The notes under the pieces are model-generated. The model saw nothing but the letters and a program-made list of their open reading frames with translations, searched no databases and was not told the origin of the DNA. Below, in pieces: positions 36,106 through 41,825 of a stretch of 64,000 bases of DNA; position 1 is the first letter of the stretch; every line of letters starts with the position of its first letter. Origin of the DNA: Eutreptiella sp. 'Long Island Sound 2002' (Eukaryota > Protista > Euglenida). The stretch covers positions 20,336,001 through 20,400,000 of the forward strand of contig OZ038379.1 of assembly GCA_964036045.1 (NCBI GenBank), written 5' to 3'. The position numbers were made by a program, and so were the translations under genes.

Positions 36106-36982
36106 TGTAGACCAAGTCTGCTGCAGCATTCTTTGGCGATAGCCTAAATTCTTTGCCACTTGTCGAGTTCCGGGATATACAACCCGGACTCGATCGGAGT
36201 TCCGGGTTATACACCCGGTTTTAATGTAGTATTGTGCAATACCATGAGCAATATTGTTATTGGCTGAGGAGTTGGTGCCTGCGTGCTTGCTGAGCTAGTT
36301 GTTGCTCATTTTGACAATGGCCAACAGCTCTTGCCTTCTTACTAGTGCCACGTGCACGTCACACTTGCACCATGCGGAAGGCCACTAACGTTGTGGGGTA
36401 TGGGGTTGCTTTCCAAACCAAGCCTTAGACTTGGCCCAAATTCCTAACTCTACATGCGAGGACTGCAAGTTAATGCAGGTTATGAAACGTGTTCAAGGGG
36501 GCATGACATGGAGGGAGCATGTGGTAAATGGTTGCTTGTTCTATACCCACCCGAATCTTGTCCCAAGCTTGTGTAGTTTCGTGTGCGTTTCTTGTACATT
36601 TAGTACCAAACTCACACAATCCGTTTAAGCTTCTCGTTTCCCATGTAAGAGCTACTTGTACATATTTGTGTCGTCTTCCTGGACAAATTGACACAGTGTG
36701 CGCAAACCTACCACCGAACCATCAAACCATGTGTCATTGCGGTTCGCGATGCGAAGGTATTCGAATTCGTACCAAAAAGTGGCACCAAAACTATGACAGT
36801 ATGGCCGGGCAAACACACAACTATGTACAAGTAGCTTGCACATAGTGTACGAGTAGCTTTACAAGCTATGTGGGTTTGCGTGCAAATGTGCACCACTTTC
36901 CAGCACAAAAATACGGGTGGGCGCATTATTTTACCTGTGTGAAACACCACCTATTCCATCACAAGCCAATTATTGCGAGAGA

Positions 36983-38965
36983 ATGGAACGTGTGCATGAA
37001 GCACCCAACGAGGGGGATGAAATCGACGAGTTGACCTTGGATGGGACTGCCCGCCACATACGCTCAGTTTGTGGTGAAATTCGTCGTTGCCCCGGCCAGA
37101 TCATGGTCGCCATCATGGTCGTGCCCATTATTTTGTGCATTGTGGTGCGGTCTGCGGATGTTAAATCCCCTGGCACCGCAAGGTTGCATGCGATCGGTGT
37201 CGATAGCTCCATGGGTACACTCCAAGCGATTGCCCAAATTGGGAGCCATGTAACCAAGCACGCCACGACTATCACAGGTCCAACCAGGGGCATATCCGTG
37301 CGGACTACACGCAAGCACCCCATTCCTTTTCCGGCGATGCACCCGCCCGGAGTGTCCTCGCTCGCGCGAACCACTTGGCCTCAAAAGTCCATCACATGGC
37401 TCGCCCTTGGCCCGTTGTGCTTGTTTGGAGCAACGATTGCAGTGTGGCTCCGACGTGGTTTTGCCGCACCCTCGAAGGCGTGGGACCCTGGCTCCAAACT
37501 TTGCGATCCATCACGGGTCGCTCAAAGCACGGACCGCCGATTCGCAATGTGCGGTGTCGTCGGTATGCATGTCCCTCCGGACCGCCACCGGTTGCATGCA
37601 CCCACAATGTATCAGGAGGTGCTCGCGTTATTGCATGAGGCAGTGGCCAGCGGTGTTTGGCCAACCACCTCTAGTGCACGCGCGCGCCTCATTGACGGTT
37701 GCGGGCTTCACGGGGTTGCCCGTGGGGCATCTTTCACCGTCGTCAACCCGTTGCTGACCGAGCCCGCAAGACCGAAAGGGCGTGGTGGTTCGAAGGCAAG
37801 GGGCCGCAAAAAGAGAGGTGCCCTTGGCAACAAATTGTTCCCAGCCCTCGCGGAAGCTGTATTTCGGTTGGAGGCTGAGATCGCCCCTCGTGGGCGACCG
37901 GGAAGTGCTCAATGTGTTGTCAATTACAACACGCGGTTTGTGCCCCACGTGGACATGGGGTCGGGTGCTGGTGGCGATGCCACGTGCCTTATTGTTGCCC
38001 TCGGAGACTACGTTGGGGGTGGCGTCGTTGTGGAAGGACAGGTGCACGACGTGCGATATTCGCCGCTGGAGTTTGACGGGTGGAGACAGACCCACTGGAC
38101 CGAGCCGTTTATCGGCGATCGGTTCAGTCTCGTGTGGTACACTCCGACTACGGAGACACACGCAGTGGCTGCGGCGCGAATCTCCCGCGACTACGACCCG
38201 CCCATCCGGTACCGACCAGGGTCCACGGATGAAAACGTCGTTGTCGAGGTGCTGGGCCCGCGCCACGTGTATGCAGGGCCTGCCCGCGGTGACCCTCGGT
38301 GGCCTCCAACCGACTTCTCTCCGCGTGGTCACGTTGTGCTAGATGTTGGGGCACACATAGGGGCTTTCACGCGGTATGCGTTGGAGGCTGGTGCGTCGCG
38401 TGTGCTTGCTTTCGAGCCAGAACCCGAGAACGCGGCCCTACTTTGCGACAACGCTACTCCATTCGTCGGCCATGTTCAGCTATTCGAGGCAGCAGTCGTG
38501 CATGGCGGAGGGGACGTGCGCGATTTAGTACTGGGGCGCGACCGCAGCGATGGTGTCAAGAACACCTGGCGGCATGCGCTCGCGGGTCTCACGCACTACC
38601 AGGATTCTGCACGGGGTGAAGGCGCCGACGTGCTGCAGCGCGTGCGTGTCGCGACGGTGCCGTTATTTGGCCCTGGAGGGGTACTCACTGATGACGTAAC
38701 CTTCGTGAAGCTGGACTGCGAAGGGGCTGAGCTGGAGCTGCTCTTAACTTTCCCGCCCGGAGGCTGGCGCAATGTGCAGCGGCTTGTGTTTGAGTGGTCG
38801 TTCACAAAGAATCGCAGCATGGACGACTTCCGGGCGGTCGTGGCGCGGCTCGAATCTGAAGGATTTCAGGTGATGCACGAGGGCGTGGGGCATTGGGACC
38901 AGCTCCCGGAATGGCCATGGAATATGGACGCAGTGGTTTTTGCTGCCCGAGATCTGGGCTGCTGA
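36983..38965 (+). CDS. 2OG-Fe(II) dioxygenase fused to an FkbM-family SAM methyltransferase, with a two-TM N-terminal presequence
   Basis: HxD (PHVD 37945-53), distal H (38093), RxS (DRFSL 38120); FkbM motifs RPGSTDENV, LDVGAHIG, AFEPEPEN, KLDCEGAE. Uninterrupted frame; first ATG at 36983. Confidence 0.88.
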   Translation: MERVHEAPNEGDEIDELTLDGTARHIRSVCGEIRRCPGQIMVAIMVVPIILCIVVRSADVKSPGTARLHAIGVDSSMGTLQAIAQIGSHVTKHATTITGPTRGISVRTTRKHPIPFPAMHPPGVSSLARTTWPQKSITWLALGPLCLFGATIAVWLRRGFAAPSKAWDPGSKLCDPSRVAQSTDRRFAMCGVVGMHVPPDRHRLHAPTMYQEVLALLHEAVASGVWPTTSSARARLIDGCGLHGVARGASFTVVNPLLTEPARPKGRGGSKARGRKKRGALGNKLFPALAEAVFRLEAEIAPRGRPGSAQCVVNYNTRFVPHVDMGSGAGGDATCLIVALGDYVGGGVVVEGQVHDVRYSPLEFDGWRQTHWTEPFIGDRFSLVWYTPTTETHAVAAARISRDYDPPIRYRPGSTDENVVVEVLGPRHVYAGPARGDPRWPPTDFSPRGHVVLDVGAHIGAFTRYALEAGASRVLAFEPEPENAALLCDNATPFVGHVQLFEAAVVHGGGDVRDLVLGRDRSDGVKNTWRHALAGLTHYQDSARGEGADVLQRVRVATVPLFGPGGVLTDDVTFVKLDCEGAELELLLTFPPGGWRNVQRLVFEWSFTKNRSMDDFRAVVARLESEGFQVMHEGVGHWDQLPEWPWNMDAVVFAARDLGC

Positions 38966-41825
38966 TGTCGTGGAGGCAGGGCCACGCATGATGAAAAAGG
39001 ACAGTGTCTGGGAGATGGGTTTGCGTTCATGCCTCCTGGTCTAATTGAGTTTGCAGGAGCCCCTGCTCAATGCGCAGCCGCAAACGGTGGTGCCGAAATG
39101 GCAACGCACCACGCATGGGGTGCAAGGCACCATCACAGTGTGCTGTAATTCTTTGTGCGACCTGCTACCTCTGCTACAGTCATGAGCGGACAGTCTGAAT
39201 GGGGCTGTGGCTCTGGGTGAGAAGCGGTGTGCATGCTGTGGGCATTGGCGTGGGGAGGAGCGCTTGCAGCAGTTGGCGCCTCACTTGTTGACTGCTGGCC
39301 TGGCCTGTCTAACTGACTGATTGGCTGACTGTCAGCCTCTCTTCGAGGTGCACTGCCGAAGGCAATTGAATTTTGATTGCAGAAAACATTTGACTTGAAA
39401 TTCTTGATTGGAGAATAATTGATGTGGCAAAAAGTGCATCGAAAAATTTTTTGGCTTTGAAAATTGTTTTATCCGGAACTCTTTGTTGGGCAACAGTTAT
39501 GATTGGAAACACAATTGTTTGGCCGATCATCTGAAGAAGATTTCAGGCTCCAAAGGCCGTGTGTGTAAAGAAAATGCAATTGCTTAAAGCTGCAAACAGC
39601 CTCGTACAAAGAAACACTGAGAGCTGTGAGAACAATTTTTTTTTGCAAAAAGCCTCAGGATTAAAATTCACATACAAATTGATGGTTGTTGGGTGGTTCA
39701 TACATGGGTCATGTTTGTGTTTTTTGCAACTCTAGATTAATAAACAATGTCCTATGTCGTTTGCTCTACAGAATGTTTTGCACTACTCATCCCCAAGGCA
39801 TCCAGCATGTTTCCTATGTCTTTTTGCATGCAGCGCAAAAAAGTATTGCACTGTTCATCTCCAATGCATACATTTCTTTGCCATAGGTATCATGTAACAA
39901 AAACAATTTCTCTTCACTAACCCTTTTTTAGAATGTTTTGCATAGTGTTGTGCAACACCCATTGGCACCCATGCACCAGATTGAAAGACAATTAACTGCC
40001 TACACATTTCCTTTGTGTCATTGTTTCTACCATGCCTATGCACTGCACCAAACTTTAATGATTTTCCAAATATTGTCCAAACCAATGCGCCATGTACAAC
40101 ACCTCGCCTCTAAGAATCCCCCCCCCCCCGGCTTGACGATCCTTTGTTCAGGAAGAGGCCAAGGTTGCAAGGCAGGTGTTGCAGTGGTTAACATCCATAA
40201 GGACTTTTATTTTTTTTTTAACGGATGGACAGTCCCAAATCGCATGGCAACATAAATTGCATCAACAGAAATACACAGAAGCACTATGGCCTTGTCCACT
40301 GTGCCAACAAAGCAACAAATTGTTCTTCGAGAAAGGGAAACAGTCGTGCAAAAATACCACAAGCAGTTGCAACATAAAAAAGCTTATACTTCATGGTGCC
40401 ATCTCCGAACTGCACTTCAGAGCCACGAAACACTCCAGTGTACCAAGGGTCAGTAAATAGGACGTGGACCAACATCCCATTGACTGCTGCAGGTTGCCAT
40501 GATTTCTCAATTCGTCGCTGCAGAGCTGTGCATCGCCACTCCTGCTGTAGCATCCGCCCCCCCCCTTTGCAATCCCCCCCCGGGGGAACCGTGACTTTGA
40601 CAGCAGGTTTTTTGGTTGTGCTCTCTTGTTCTTCCCATGCTGGTGCCCCCCATCAGACTTGACTCCTCTTTGCATTCAGACACAAATGTATGCCATAGGC
40701 GCTGATGTTTGGTACCACTCTCACAGCAGTGGTGGCCAACTGTGGCACACAGCAAGGGTGGCCAATTGTCATTGGTCCCTTGCTCCGGACCCGAGTTCCT
40801 GCCTATTCAATACCAGGGTACTGGGGCCAAGGTGGTGGATCGATGTATCTCCTGAGTCGCTGGGATCTCCTGGTGTTGACAACTGTGCTTCTCCGCAACC
40901 AGCCCCCACAGCTACACCACAGGCACCTATACCCAAACCTGCTCCCAAGCACAGTGTGAAACGGGTTCTGGAAAGTGGTACAGATTTGTGGTATACAGAT
41001 TTGTGGTGCAACCCCCCCCCCCAAGAAGGGGAACCATCACTTCACGACCCCCCCCCCCGGGGAGGGGGGTGGCCTAACAAAAGGGGGGAGATTGCGGGGG
41101 GGGGGGGGGGGGCTAGTTGGTGTCAATATTATTGGTCGCAGCTGCCGCTTTGTGTGCACGGTTTTCCATTCCCATGTGTCGGTCGCGTCGCGTCGCACGT
41201 GCAGCAGCAGAAAATAAAAATAAAAACAAGAAAACCCTGTAGAGCCAAAGGCAAACACACAGAATTTTGAATTTGCCGACCTCAAAAAGCCCCCCAGAAT
41301 TTTTACGCCAAAAATTGGCGAGTGGGGCGCAAAATACCACCCCCCACAACCACAAAAAAGAACACTGGCGCCATGAAGTGCAAGGCGAGAAGGAGGGCAC
41401 GGCAGAGCAAGCGGTGCGTGTGTGTTAGGGCACCAGGGAGGGCAGTGGGTAAAGGGTAAAGATTGCGAGCAAGCAAGACAAAAGCAAAGCACGAGGGCAA
41501 GGCTCCTCACCCACTTTGTTGCAAAAAATCATTGGTGGGTAGATCTACGAGAAGCCCTATGCACGCCACTGATTGAGCCAAAGGTGGAGGTGTCAAACAA
41601 GGAGAAGACCACGCAGGTCCGCTTGACAGCCCCACAGGGGAATGAAGAATCCCGTAGTCCACATATGGAGCGCCATGCCAATCATTGCGGGAAAAGCGCT
41701 GCCCTACTGGGTACATGTACCCTGGCCTCACACCCTGGTTTAGTGCATCCTCTCCTCAAACCTTTGTTTGTCCATCCTGACCCATGACATCAAAAACAGC
41801 AGGCGGAGGGAAGGCACCACGACAT

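What the first reader, a model, noticed from the sequence alone, without database searches (positions are those of the whole stretch)
36983..38965. Intronless 2OG-Fe(II) dioxygenase-FkbM methyltransferase fusion with a euglenid plastid-type presequence
The dioxygenase (VNYN..F.PHVD...IVALGDY.GG...FDG...H.TEPF.GDRFSLVWY) has the compact layout of TET/JBP/AlkB-related enzymes and is preceded by a basic patch (KGRGGSKARGRKKRG). FkbM methylases are known neighbours of TET/JBP and glycosyltransferase genes in phage base-hypermodification loci, and euglenozoans make base J. The N-terminus has TM1 (37100-37147), an 81-aa S/T/R/H/P-rich spacer and TM2 (37391-37450) followed by RR, matching Euglena class I plastid targeting. 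Inference: a two-step oxidise-then-methylate enzyme acting in the plastid on nucleic acid or a metabolite, possibly acquired horizontally or by retroposition given the lack of introns.
Basis: partly seen in the sequence, partly recalled or inferred. Interest (0 to 1): 0.85.

Follow-up and report, generated by a model that had tools for sequence, protein, structure and literature searches.

The report
Plastid-type dioxygenase–methyltransferase fusion in a euglenid
This alga has an expressed, intron-free gene that joins an iron-dependent oxidising enzyme (of a so far unnamed family related to DNA-base oxidisers of viruses) to a methyl-adding enzyme behind a chloroplast-type import signal, so it is a good candidate for making an unknown chemical mark on chloroplast RNA or DNA.

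Summary
Window 36983-38965 (+) is one uninterrupted 660-codon ORF. A transcript contig joins the spliced leader to an AG acceptor at 36964-65, 17 nt before the first ATG (36983).

- **FkbM domain.** Residues 451-629 are a clear FkbM methyltransferase.
- **Dioxygenase domain ("X").** Residues about 205-390 match no Pfam model. They fold as a 2OG-Fe(II) dioxygenase and keep H322, D324, H371 and R380, which are at least 90% conserved in 44 relatives.
- **Family context.** X belongs to a large, unnamed family.
  - In diatoms, pelagophytes and other algae it usually follows a PUS1/TruA-like domain, and often precedes FkbM.
  - In virophage-type and other viral contigs it is fused or adjacent to the TET-associated glycosyltransferase. 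One such fusion aligns end to end with a true Tet_JBP-TAGT protein.
  - This context favours a nucleic-acid base as substrate over a protein. Structure alone ties TET, AlkB and prolyl hydroxylases.
- **N-terminus.** It fits the euglenid class I plastid presequence. About a quarter of the full-length algal relatives checked carry heterokont-type plastid signals.

Not shown: localisation, substrate, reaction order, and transcription of the 3' part. I found no sign of retroposition. The scan did not report this on other DNA.

The parts
36964..36965 (+). AG trans-splice acceptor where the spliced leader is added
   Evidence: an RNA contig matches from 36965 on and is preceded by spliced-leader letters; the local sequence reads ...CACAAG|CC; the leader 21-mer occurs 44 times in the genome against 0 for the control.
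36966..36982 (+). 17-nt 5' UTR of the mature mRNA
36983..38965 (+). Complete coding sequence, 660 aa plus TGA, with no intron
   Evidence: It is colinear with homologues over aa 198-657. ORF GC is 0.605 against 0.47 in the flanks.
36983..37099 (+). Acidic N-terminal stretch (aa 1-39, net charge -4) ahead of the first hydrophobic segment
37100..37147 (+). Hydrophobic segment 1 (aa 40-55): signal peptide or signal anchor
   Evidence: the Kyte-Doolittle 13-residue window peaks at 3.3 at aa 48-49. This lies inside the published signal-peptide range of 9-60.
37148..37390 (+). Transit-peptide-like spacer (aa 56-136, 81 aa)
   Evidence: S+T is 24.7% against 9.2% in the mature part, acidic residues are 2.5% against 11.9%, net charge is +8, and Pro is 9.9%. 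This matches the composition described for euglenid transit-peptide-like regions.
37391..37450 (+). Hydrophobic segment 2 (aa 137-156), followed by RR: stop-transfer anchor
   Evidence: the hydropathy peak is about 2.0 at aa 146-150. This is some 20 residues later than the published average range of 97-130.
37451..37597 (+). Basic linker (aa 157-205) without homologues
   Evidence: homology to relatives starts at about aa 198-209.
37598..38155 (+). X domain (aa about 206-391): compact 2OG-Fe(II) dioxygenase with an N-terminal helix (WPxTSxAR), H322-x-D324, H371 and R380
   Evidence: Alignment A1. AlphaFold model with pLDDT 85. Fold matches to TET, PHD and AlkB. Viral relatives fused to TAGT.
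37775..37819 (+). Basic patch in a variable, low-confidence loop of the X domain
   Evidence: Viral relatives are also basic here and at their N-termini.
38156..38962 (+). Conserved linker (RYRPGSTDxxVVxEVL) plus FkbM methyltransferase, with SAM motif VLDVGAHIG, EPEPEN and KLDCEGAE
   Evidence: Two-domain model with pLDDT 89.8 and pTM 0.88. Nearest shapes are phage FkbM proteins with TM 0.90.

Best explanation
**What it is.** This is an expressed, intron-free nuclear gene of a euglenophyte. It encodes a bifunctional enzyme behind a class I (signal peptide, transit-peptide-like spacer, stop-transfer) plastid presequence.

**Catalytic part.** It is a rigid two-domain unit.
- The X domain is a compact Fe(II)/2-oxoglutarate dioxygenase. 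It belongs to an unnamed family whose viral members take the place of TET/JBP next to the TET-associated glycosyltransferase.
- The second domain is an FkbM-family SAM-dependent methyltransferase.

**Most likely mechanism.**
1. X hydroxylates a base in a plastid nucleic acid, most plausibly the 5-methyl group of a pyrimidine.
2. FkbM caps the new hydroxyl with a methyl group. This parallels the glycosyltransferase that caps the hydroxyl in the viral relatives.

I favour RNA as substrate, because the algal relatives carry a PUS1-like domain. DNA is not excluded.

**Shown:** gene structure, trans-splicing at the 5' end, both folds, the conserved catalytic residues, and the family's domain partners.

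**Inferred:** plastid location, nucleic-acid substrate, order of the two steps, and the product.
For: **Gene and transcript**
- ORF and spliced-leader junction.

**FkbM**
- Family matches over the cut-offs, with intact SAM motifs.

**X domain**
- H, D, H and R are at least 90% conserved in 44 sequences.
- DSBH fold: the top Foldseek hits are CcTet and CMD1.
- The family is large: 1857 representatives at E<=1e-3 and 310 at E<=1e-30.

**Partners of X that speak for nucleic acid**
- PUS1/TruA-like domain (PDB profile E 1.4e-13; Pfam).
- C2H2 finger within the first 140 aa in 72 of 131 full-length (M-start, >=550 aa) proteins.
- An AlkB-type domain in P0026.
- TAGT fused in both orders, and as a neighbouring gene, in viral contigs.
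- X-TAGT (L025) aligns over its whole length with a Tet_JBP(74.7 bits)-TAGT protein, at 39% identity and E 2e-68.
- hhalign lines up HxD, H and R.
- Published work shows that phage 5-methylpyrimidine dioxygenases and JGT-like GT-A enzymes glycosylate 5hmC in DNA, and notes such pairs on giant-virus contigs (10.1101/2023.12.21.572611).

**Coupling of the two domains**
- pTM is 0.88 for the 462-residue two-domain model.
- The inter-domain linker is conserved.

**Plastid targeting**
- Presequence layout and composition fit the published ranges.
- 44 of 131 full-length relatives have an N-terminal hydrophobic core. 31 of these 44 have an [AGSC]F site after it, against 19 of 87 without a core (p 1e-7).
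- Ebenezer 2019 lists an FkbM methyltransferase among predicted E. gracilis chloroplast proteins. Orthology was not checked.
Against: - **No sequence membership.** No sequence search places X in Tet_JBP. The query has no Pfam hit, and the best viral relatives reach 20.6 bits against a cut-off of 34.9.
- **Structure does not discriminate.** In the exhaustive structural search, prolyl hydroxylases (Z 11.8 and 11.5) tie with ALKBH1 (11.0) and NgTET1 (10.9).
- **Prolyl-hydroxylase-like features.** A giant-virus member just passes PF13640, with 27.8 bits against 27. The distal His to Arg spacing (+9) is the one I recall for PHD2 rather than for TET/JBP. This is from memory; the PHD2 alignment is.
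- **Collagen neighbours.** Two virophage-type loci also carry collagen-repeat genes.
- **Presequence oddities.** The gene itself has no PUS1-like domain. The second hydrophobic segment lies about 20 residues later, and the spacer is about 20 residues longer, than the published averages. The presequence also starts with an unusual 39-residue acidic stretch.
- **Partial RNA evidence.** RNA covers only 36965-37343.
- **No direct functional data.** There are no data on location, substrate or product.
- **Divergent relatives.** The PUS1-like domain of relatives has Glu where the catalytic Asp should be, so its meaning is uncertain. The closest homologue, P0002, lacks the HxD aspartate.
Confidence: 0.5

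Rival explanations
1. X is a protein hydroxylase of the prolyl/lysyl 4-hydroxylase type (like PHD2, the bacterial EF-Tu prolyl hydroxylase or OGFOD1), acting on a plastid or translation-related protein. The FkbM domain then methylates the same protein or another acceptor. On this reading the viral X-glycosyltransferase fusions would hydroxylate and glycosylate collagen-like proteins, as the Mimivirus bifunctional enzyme is reported to do (recalled, not checked here).
For: - The top rows of the exhaustive structure search are prolyl hydroxylases: 6f0w Z 11.8 and 4iw3 Z 11.5.
- The only PDB sequence hint is PHD2, with motif-for-motif alignment at E 0.6.
- PF13640 scores 27.8 bits against a cut-off of 27 for a giant-virus member, and E 1.9e-5 for L025.
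- Collagen-repeat genes lie near the fusion in L008 and L009.
Against: - In algae X is fused to a PUS1-like domain, C2H2 fingers and an AlkB-type domain, not to peptide-binding modules.
- The partner glycosyltransferase matches the TET-associated family over its cut-off. In L033 the same subfamily is fused to a bona fide Tet_JBP domain, colinear with X-TAGT.
- Collagen repeats occur in only 2 of 20 viral loci.
- The Foldseek ranking puts TET enzymes first.
Confidence: 0.17
2. The two hydrophobic segments are a permanent hairpin membrane anchor, not an import signal. The enzyme sits on the cytosolic face of the ER, of the outer plastid membrane or of another endomembrane, and acts on cytosolic RNA or another cytosolic substrate.
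For: - A 39-residue acidic stretch precedes the first hydrophobic segment, which is more like a signal anchor than a cleaved signal peptide.
- The spacer (81 aa) and the position of segment 2 (137-156) exceed the published averages.
- RR after segment 2 predicts a cytosolic catalytic part. This is also the transit topology of class I precursors.
- Many relatives have no targeting signal at all.
Against: - The spacer has the composition of a transit-peptide-like region (S+T 25%, acidic 2.5%, net +8, Pro-rich), very unlike the rest of the protein.
- Relatives in heterokonts carry plastid-type bipartite signals.
- The nearest TruA-less relative, P0004, also starts with a hydrophobic segment followed by a basic, acid-poor stretch.
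Confidence: 0.2
3. It is a tailoring enzyme for a small molecule or a glycan (hydroxylation followed by O-methylation), as in polyketide or sugar pathways, where both FkbM and 2OG oxygenases are common.
For: - FkbM's founding member is an O-methyltransferase of a macrolide pathway (family knowledge).
- Phage FkbM proteins that resemble this domain are often fused to group 1 glycosyltransferases.
- A bacterial cluster of about 519 aa combines FkbM with a 2OG-FeII_Oxy_3 domain. This is a lead only, at score 0.87.
Against: - The predicted topology puts the catalytic part outside the ER/Golgi lumen, so secretory glycans are unlikely targets.
- The partners of X in eukaryotes are nucleic-acid modules.
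- No biosynthetic neighbours are present. The gene lies between transposon remains.
Confidence: 0.08

Closest known systems
TET/JBP (5-methylpyrimidine) dioxygenases with their tailoring glycosyltransferases (JBP1/2 + JGT; phage 5mYOX + GT-A/TAGT)
   Same: - Double-stranded beta-helix fold with HxD...H...R.
- The top Foldseek matches are CcTet and CMD1.
- Viral members of the X family are fused or adjacent to TAGT, and are colinear with a Tet_JBP-TAGT protein.
- The logic 'make a hydroxyl, then cap it' is shared.
   Different: - It does not reach the Pfam Tet_JBP cut-off.
- It is much smaller than JBP or metazoan TET and has no J-binding or CXXC domain.
- The capping enzyme is a methyltransferase, not a glycosyltransferase.
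- The predicted location is the plastid, not the nucleus.
- The eukaryotic relatives carry a PUS1-like RNA module.
ALKBH8 (RRM-AlkB dioxygenase-methyltransferase; makes mcm5U and hydroxylates it in tRNA)
   Same: One polypeptide joins a 2OG-Fe(II) dioxygenase and a SAM methyltransferase that act in succession on the same nucleic-acid base (family knowledge).
   Different: - The dioxygenase clade differs (AlkB), as does the methyltransferase (Trm9-like, not FkbM).
- The order is methylate, then hydroxylate.
- ALKBH8 is cytosolic.
- There is no sequence relation beyond the superfamily.
HIF/EF-Tu-type prolyl hydroxylases (PHD2, Pseudomonas PPHD; Pfam 2OG-FeII_Oxy_3)
   Same: - Highest Z-scores in the exhaustive structure search.
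- Similar C-terminal motif H-x-[TV]-x-P-x4-R-[FY]-[SA]-[LI].
- Borderline PF13640 hits in viral members.
   Different: - No peptide-substrate context.
- The partners are nucleic-acid modules and TAGT.
- The N-terminal helix motif WPxTSxAR is specific to the X family.
FkbM-family methyltransferases (TIGR01444 / PF05050)
   Same: - Scores over both curated cut-offs.
- SAM motif I and the K-x-D-x-E-G-x-E motif are present.
- TM is 0.90 to small phage FkbM proteins.
   Different: It forms its own algal clade. Bacterial FkbM proteins are only 28-38% identical, with a gap in scores. It is always found downstream of the X domain in this clade.

Membership tests
2OG-Fe(II) dioxygenase superfamily (DSBH) | Double-stranded beta-helix fold | tested here: met
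   The AlphaFold model has pLDDT 85.4. There are 74 PDB chains at Foldseek E<=1e-3 and 51 chains at Z>=8; those listed at the top of both searches are 2OG oxygenases.
2OG-Fe(II) dioxygenase superfamily (DSBH) | Metal triad HxD...H and a basic residue for the 2OG carboxylate | tested here: met
   H322, D324, H371 and R380 are present and at least 90% conserved in 44 homologues.
TET/JBP family (Pfam PF12851) | Sequence match over the curated cut-off | tested here: not met
   The query has no hit. One of 44 members reaches E 0.066. Viral relatives score 15-21 bits against a cut-off of 34.9.
TET/JBP family (Pfam PF12851) | Association with a TET-associated glycosyltransferase or other base-tailoring enzyme | tested here: met
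   This is met for viral members of the X family: fusions in L008-L010 and L025, and a neighbouring gene in L012. L025 is colinear with the Tet_JBP-TAGT protein of L033. The window gene itself carries FkbM instead.
TET/JBP family (Pfam PF12851) | Oxidation of the 5-methyl group of T or 5mC in a polynucleotide | not testable with these tools
   This needs an enzyme assay with LC-MS.
Prolyl 4-hydroxylase-like (Pfam PF13640) | Sequence match over the curated cut-off | tested here: inconclusive
   The query has no hit. A giant-virus relative scores 27.8 bits against a cut-off of 27, and L025 scores 26.0. Structural Z-scores tie with TET and AlkB.
FkbM methyltransferase (PF05050 / TIGR01444) | Sequence match over the curated cut-offs | tested here: met
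   52.9 bits against 22.7, and 66.4 bits against 37.7.
FkbM methyltransferase (PF05050 / TIGR01444) | Intact SAM-binding motif I and class I methyltransferase fold | tested here: met
   VLDVGAHIG lies at aa 452-460 and is invariant or nearly so in A3. The model has pLDDT about 95 over the domain. Fold matches include 2py6 (FkbM) and other class I methyltransferases.
Euglenid class I plastid presequence | N-terminal hydrophobic signal segment, then a hydroxylated, basic, acid-poor spacer, then a second hydrophobic stop-transfer segment | tested here: met
   The segments lie at aa 40-55 and 137-156. The spacer has S+T 25%, acidic residues 2.5% and net charge +8.
Euglenid class I plastid presequence | Positions within the published ranges (signal peptide 9-60, stop-transfer 97-130) | tested here: inconclusive
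   Segment 1 is inside the range. Segment 2 is about 20 residues beyond it. A 39-residue acidic stretch precedes segment 1.
Euglenid class I plastid presequence | Import into the plastid | not testable with these tools
   This needs proteomics or an import or localisation experiment.

The most novel reading that the evidence does not exclude
Algae with complex plastids (euglenophytes, diatoms, pelagophytes) share a so far undescribed enzyme family. It derives from the compact dioxygenases that viruses use with glycosyltransferases to hypermodify DNA bases. On this reading it installs a new two-step mark, hydroxylation then O-methylation (for example a 5-methoxymethyl-pyrimidine), on plastid RNA or DNA. 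The euglenid gene would be its minimal, plastid-targeted form.
Probability: 0.3. Interest if true: 0.85.

Novelty: new variant of a known kind. Interest (0 to 1): 0.62.

Why it matters
If the reading is right, this family would be a new route to modified bases in organelles. It pairs a TET/JBP-like oxidiser with a methyltransferase instead of a sugar transferase, and the pair appears in several unrelated algal lineages, with viral relatives. That would predict a nucleoside not yet catalogued in plastid RNA or DNA, and it gives a compact, soluble two-domain enzyme with which to test the prediction.

It also gives a name and a context to a sizeable unnamed protein family: 1857 cluster representatives at E<=1e-3, with no Pfam model.

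If the prolyl-hydroxylase reading is right instead, the finding is an ordinary lineage-specific fusion.

Tried and rejected
- **Sequence searches for X.** Pfam and NCBIfam on the whole protein, and phmmer or a profile against PDB sequences, gave nothing significant for the X domain.
- **Phage GenBank records.** tblastn gave no match.
- **Literature.** No paper in the library holds FkbM together with pseudouridine synthase and dioxygenase, or FkbM together with JBP. The two Aravind-group papers most likely to mention the family (Cell Cycle 2009, NAR 2013) are not held. Prior description cannot be excluded.
- **Plastid proteome.** The supplements of the plastid proteome preprint hold no 'FkbM'.
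- **Retroposition: rejected.** The DNA upstream of the acceptor is not the spliced leader. There is no poly(A) run after the stop. The presequence has a single genomic copy.
- **Base J synthesis: rejected.** There is no JBP-type architecture, and the predicted compartment is different.
- **Taxon of the nearest relatives (P0002-P0005): not resolved.** Their contigs are compact eukaryotic DNA without names. I therefore could not decide between endosymbiotic, horizontal and vertical origin.
- **Tree.** It places the gene with the TruA-less X-FkbM proteins on weak support only (SH-aLRT 84), and apart from the four paralogues in the same genome.
- **FkbM fold searches.** They gave only generic class I methyltransferases and phage FkbM proteins, with no clue to the acceptor.
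Full report
**1. The observation**

Window 36983-38965 (+) is one open frame of 660 codons plus TGA.

The ORF has 60.5% G+C (GC3 63%) against 47% in the 2-kb flanks. It lies between transposon remains noted by others.

**2. Expression and gene structure**

Four runs were laid on 36300-39700.
- Two runs of 2024 cover everything evenly at depth about 37. They are DNA.
- A 2013 run of the same organism holds a 373-nt contig identical to 36965-37317. Its first 20 letters (CTGAGTGTCTATTTCTTTTC) lie on nothing in the locus.
- With the following G, this 21-mer occurs 44 times in the 2.28-Gb genome against 0 for the reversed control. It has the form of the euglenid spliced leader.
- The genome reads ...CACAAG|CCAATT... 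at that point. The leader is therefore added at the AG of 36964-65, and 36983 is the first ATG of the mature mRNA.
- The presequence has only this one genomic copy, so the contig comes from this gene and from RNA.
- An estuary metatranscriptome adds two identical 151-nt contigs up to 37343.

RNA evidence stops there. That the rest is on the same mRNA follows only from the unbroken frame and from colinearity with homologues to the last residue.

There is no leader remnant, poly(A) tract or second copy that would mark a retrocopy.

Earlier notes of this scan name the organism as Euglena in some places and Eutreptiella in others. I did not test this and call it a euglenophyte.

**3. The methyltransferase**

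Residues 451-629 match PF05050 (52.9 bits, cut-off 22.7) and TIGR01444 (66.4 bits, cut-off 37.7). SAM motif I (VLDVGAHIG), EPEPEN and KLDCEGAE are present, and they are invariant or nearly so in 33 relatives.

The domain forms an algal clade of its own; bacterial FkbM proteins follow at 28-38% identity. Its nearest shapes are small phage FkbM proteins with TM 0.90. PDB matches are generic class I methyltransferases plus 2py6. Nothing here tells the acceptor.

**4. The dioxygenase ('X')**

Residues about 205-390 hit no Pfam or NCBIfam model and no PDB sequence.

In an alignment of 44 homologous segments, H124, D126, H173 and R182 are at least 90% conserved. These are H322, D324, H371 and R380 of the protein. 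An N-terminal motif WPxTSxAR is also conserved.

The AlphaFold model (pLDDT 85.4, pTM 0.84) is a double-stranded beta-helix preceded by helices.
- Foldseek ranks the TET enzymes CcTet and CMD1 first (E 1e-5), then PHD2 and AlkB.
- The exhaustive aligner gives a tie: prolyl hydroxylases at Z 11.8 and 11.5, ALKBH1 at 11.0 and NgTET1 at 10.9.

The fold and an active-looking centre are therefore shown. The subfamily cannot be read from structure.

**5. The family and its partners**

The profile finds 1857 cluster representatives at E<=1e-3 and 310 at E<=1e-30.

I classified 214 X-containing sequences:

| Architecture | Count |
|---|---|
| PUS1/TruA-like domain then X | 123 |
| PUS1/TruA-like, X, FkbM | 31 |
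| X-FkbM without the PUS1-like part (this gene included) | 7 |
| X alone or fragments | 39 |
| Viral | 14 |

- The upstream domain matches human PUS1 at E 1.4e-13 as a profile. Its RTD catalytic motif reads xQE, with Glu for the catalytic Asp. It may be a binding module rather than an active synthase.
- 72 of 131 full-length (M-start, >=550 aa) proteins have a C2H2 finger within their first 140 residues.
- One protein has an AlkB-type domain before X-FkbM.
- Named members come from Chrysophaeum, Aureococcus and Thalassiosira.
- This genome has four further X genes, one of them PUS1-like-X. It also has a 70-residue FkbM fragment.

**6. Viral relatives**

IMG/VR holds 20 loci with X at 23-37% identity.
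- Giant-virus MAGs encode stand-alone proteins of about 195 aa with very basic N-termini and the same N-terminal helix motif.
- Three contigs encode TAGT-X fusions and one encodes X-TAGT. TAGT scores 30.7-35.4 bits against a cut-off of 27.5. One of these contigs has a Sputnik-type capsid gene.
- In L012 the X gene abuts a TAGT-like gene.
- A small AT-rich contig of this assembly encodes a Tet_JBP (74.7 bits)-TAGT protein. It aligns over its whole length with X-TAGT of L025, at 39% identity and E 2e-68, with the metal and 2OG motifs in register.
- hhalign of A1 against that domain gives E 0.0025 with the same register.

X thus stands where a true TET/JBP domain stands, beside the same glycosyltransferase subfamily. 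Experimental work on phage 5-methylpyrimidine dioxygenases with JGT-like GT-A enzymes shows that such pairs hydroxylate and glycosylate DNA bases. The same work notes 65 such pairs on contigs with giant-virus capsid genes.

Language-model and shape searches also put small phage and giant-virus proteins nearest to X.

One caveat: two virophage-type loci carry collagen-repeat genes, and a giant-virus member just passes PF13640. A protein-hydroxylase reading is not excluded.

**7. Coupling of the two domains**

The X-FkbM region of 33 proteins has a conserved linker. It folds as one body with pLDDT 89.8 and pTM 0.88 over 462 residues. I read this as a fixed arrangement of the two domains. That is an inference from pTM; no interface analysis was possible.

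**8. Targeting**

The N-terminus has this layout:
- an acidic stretch, aa 1-39
- a hydrophobic segment, aa 40-55 (hydropathy 3.3)
- an 81-residue spacer with 24.7% S+T, 2.5% acidic residues, net charge +8 and 9.9% Pro
- a second hydrophobic segment, aa 137-156
- then RR

The published description of 375 Euglena plastid precursors places the signal peptide at 9-60 and the stop-transfer signal at 97-130. The region between them is hydroxylated, basic and proline-rich. Class I precursors travel with the mature part on the cytosolic side. The layout and composition fit that description. The second segment lies about 20 residues late, and the acidic start is unusual.

Two independent hints come from relatives.
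- 44 of 131 full-length relatives start with a hydrophobic core. 31 of these 44 have an [AGSC]F site shortly after it, the heterokont plastid-signal pattern as I recall it. Only 19 of the 87 without a core have it (p 1e-7).
- The TruA-less relative P0004 also starts with a hydrophobic segment and a basic stretch.

An FkbM methyltransferase is listed as 'chloroplastic' in the predicted E. gracilis proteome. I could not check that it is the orthologue.

**9. Origin**

In a quick tree, the viral sequences separate from all eukaryotic ones (99). The gene groups with the four TruA-less X-FkbM proteins (84, weak) inside a supported clade (95). That clade also holds pelagophyte-type PUS1-like-X-FkbM proteins and three of the genome's own paralogues.

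The nearest relatives sit on compact eukaryotic contigs without names. I cannot say whether the gene came with the plastid, by later transfer, or by loss of the PUS1-like part.

**10. Verdict**

The best explanation is a plastid-directed, two-step base-modifying enzyme in which a TET/JBP-like hydroxylase is followed by an O-methylating FkbM domain. I favour RNA as substrate; DNA remains possible.

The rivals are:
- a prolyl-hydroxylase-type protein modifier
- a cytosol-facing membrane-anchored enzyme
- a small-molecule tailoring enzyme

I found no description of the X family or of its FkbM and PUS1-like fusions in the searchable literature. Two relevant papers could not be read.

Noticed in passing
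window 39300-39375: A stretch of about 75 bp flanked by CTGA-type microsatellite reaches summed contig depths of 3-6 x 10^5 in the DNA runs, against about 37 for the surroundings. Many contigs diverge on both sides. It is a very abundant short repeat.
   Followed up: no
L033:664-2235 (-) = G000 contig C2138:18406-19977: An AT-rich 523-aa ORF fuses a bona fide Tet_JBP domain (74.7 bits) to a TET-associated glycosyltransferase (46.9 bits). It sits on a small contig of the assembly and looks viral or virophage-like. It may be an integrated element or a contaminant.
   Followed up: partly
L007:1504-1713 (-) = G000 C2:18882104-18882319: An isolated 70-residue piece, 80% identical to aa 483-551 of the FkbM domain, lies about 1.5 Mb away on the same contig. 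It is probably a gene fragment.
   Followed up: partly
L002, L003, L004, L005: The genome holds four further X-domain genes, 46-59% identical in the core. L003 is a PUS1-like-X fusion, and L004 has the X domain split by an intron.
   Followed up: partly
alignment A2 (PUS1-like domains of relatives such as P0036, P0039): The PUS1/TruA-like domain that precedes X in most algal relatives has a conserved xQE where pseudouridine synthases have RTD, so Glu replaces the catalytic Asp. It may be an RNA-binding pseudoenzyme.
   Followed up: partly
P0002 (closest homologue, 54% identity): The HxD motif reads H-C-S, so the metal-binding aspartate is lost while the FkbM part stays 64% identical. The dioxygenase half may be inactive in that organism.
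   Followed up: no
P0012, P0022, P0044, P0075, P0108, P0115 and others: Many diatom-type relatives begin with a signal peptide followed by an [AGSC]F site, as in heterokont plastid proteins. Others begin directly with the C2H2 finger. The family seems to have plastid and non-plastid forms.
   Followed up: partly
window 37051-37343: Two contigs of an estuary metatranscriptome are 100% identical to the gene's 5' part. This organism, or a very close strain, lives in that estuary and the RNA library holds this stretch.
   Followed up: no
L008:5600-7984 (+), L009:650-775 (+): Collagen-repeat genes lie on the two virophage-type contigs that carry TAGT-X fusions. This may be incidental, or it may hint at protein hydroxylation and glycosylation there.
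   Followed up: partly
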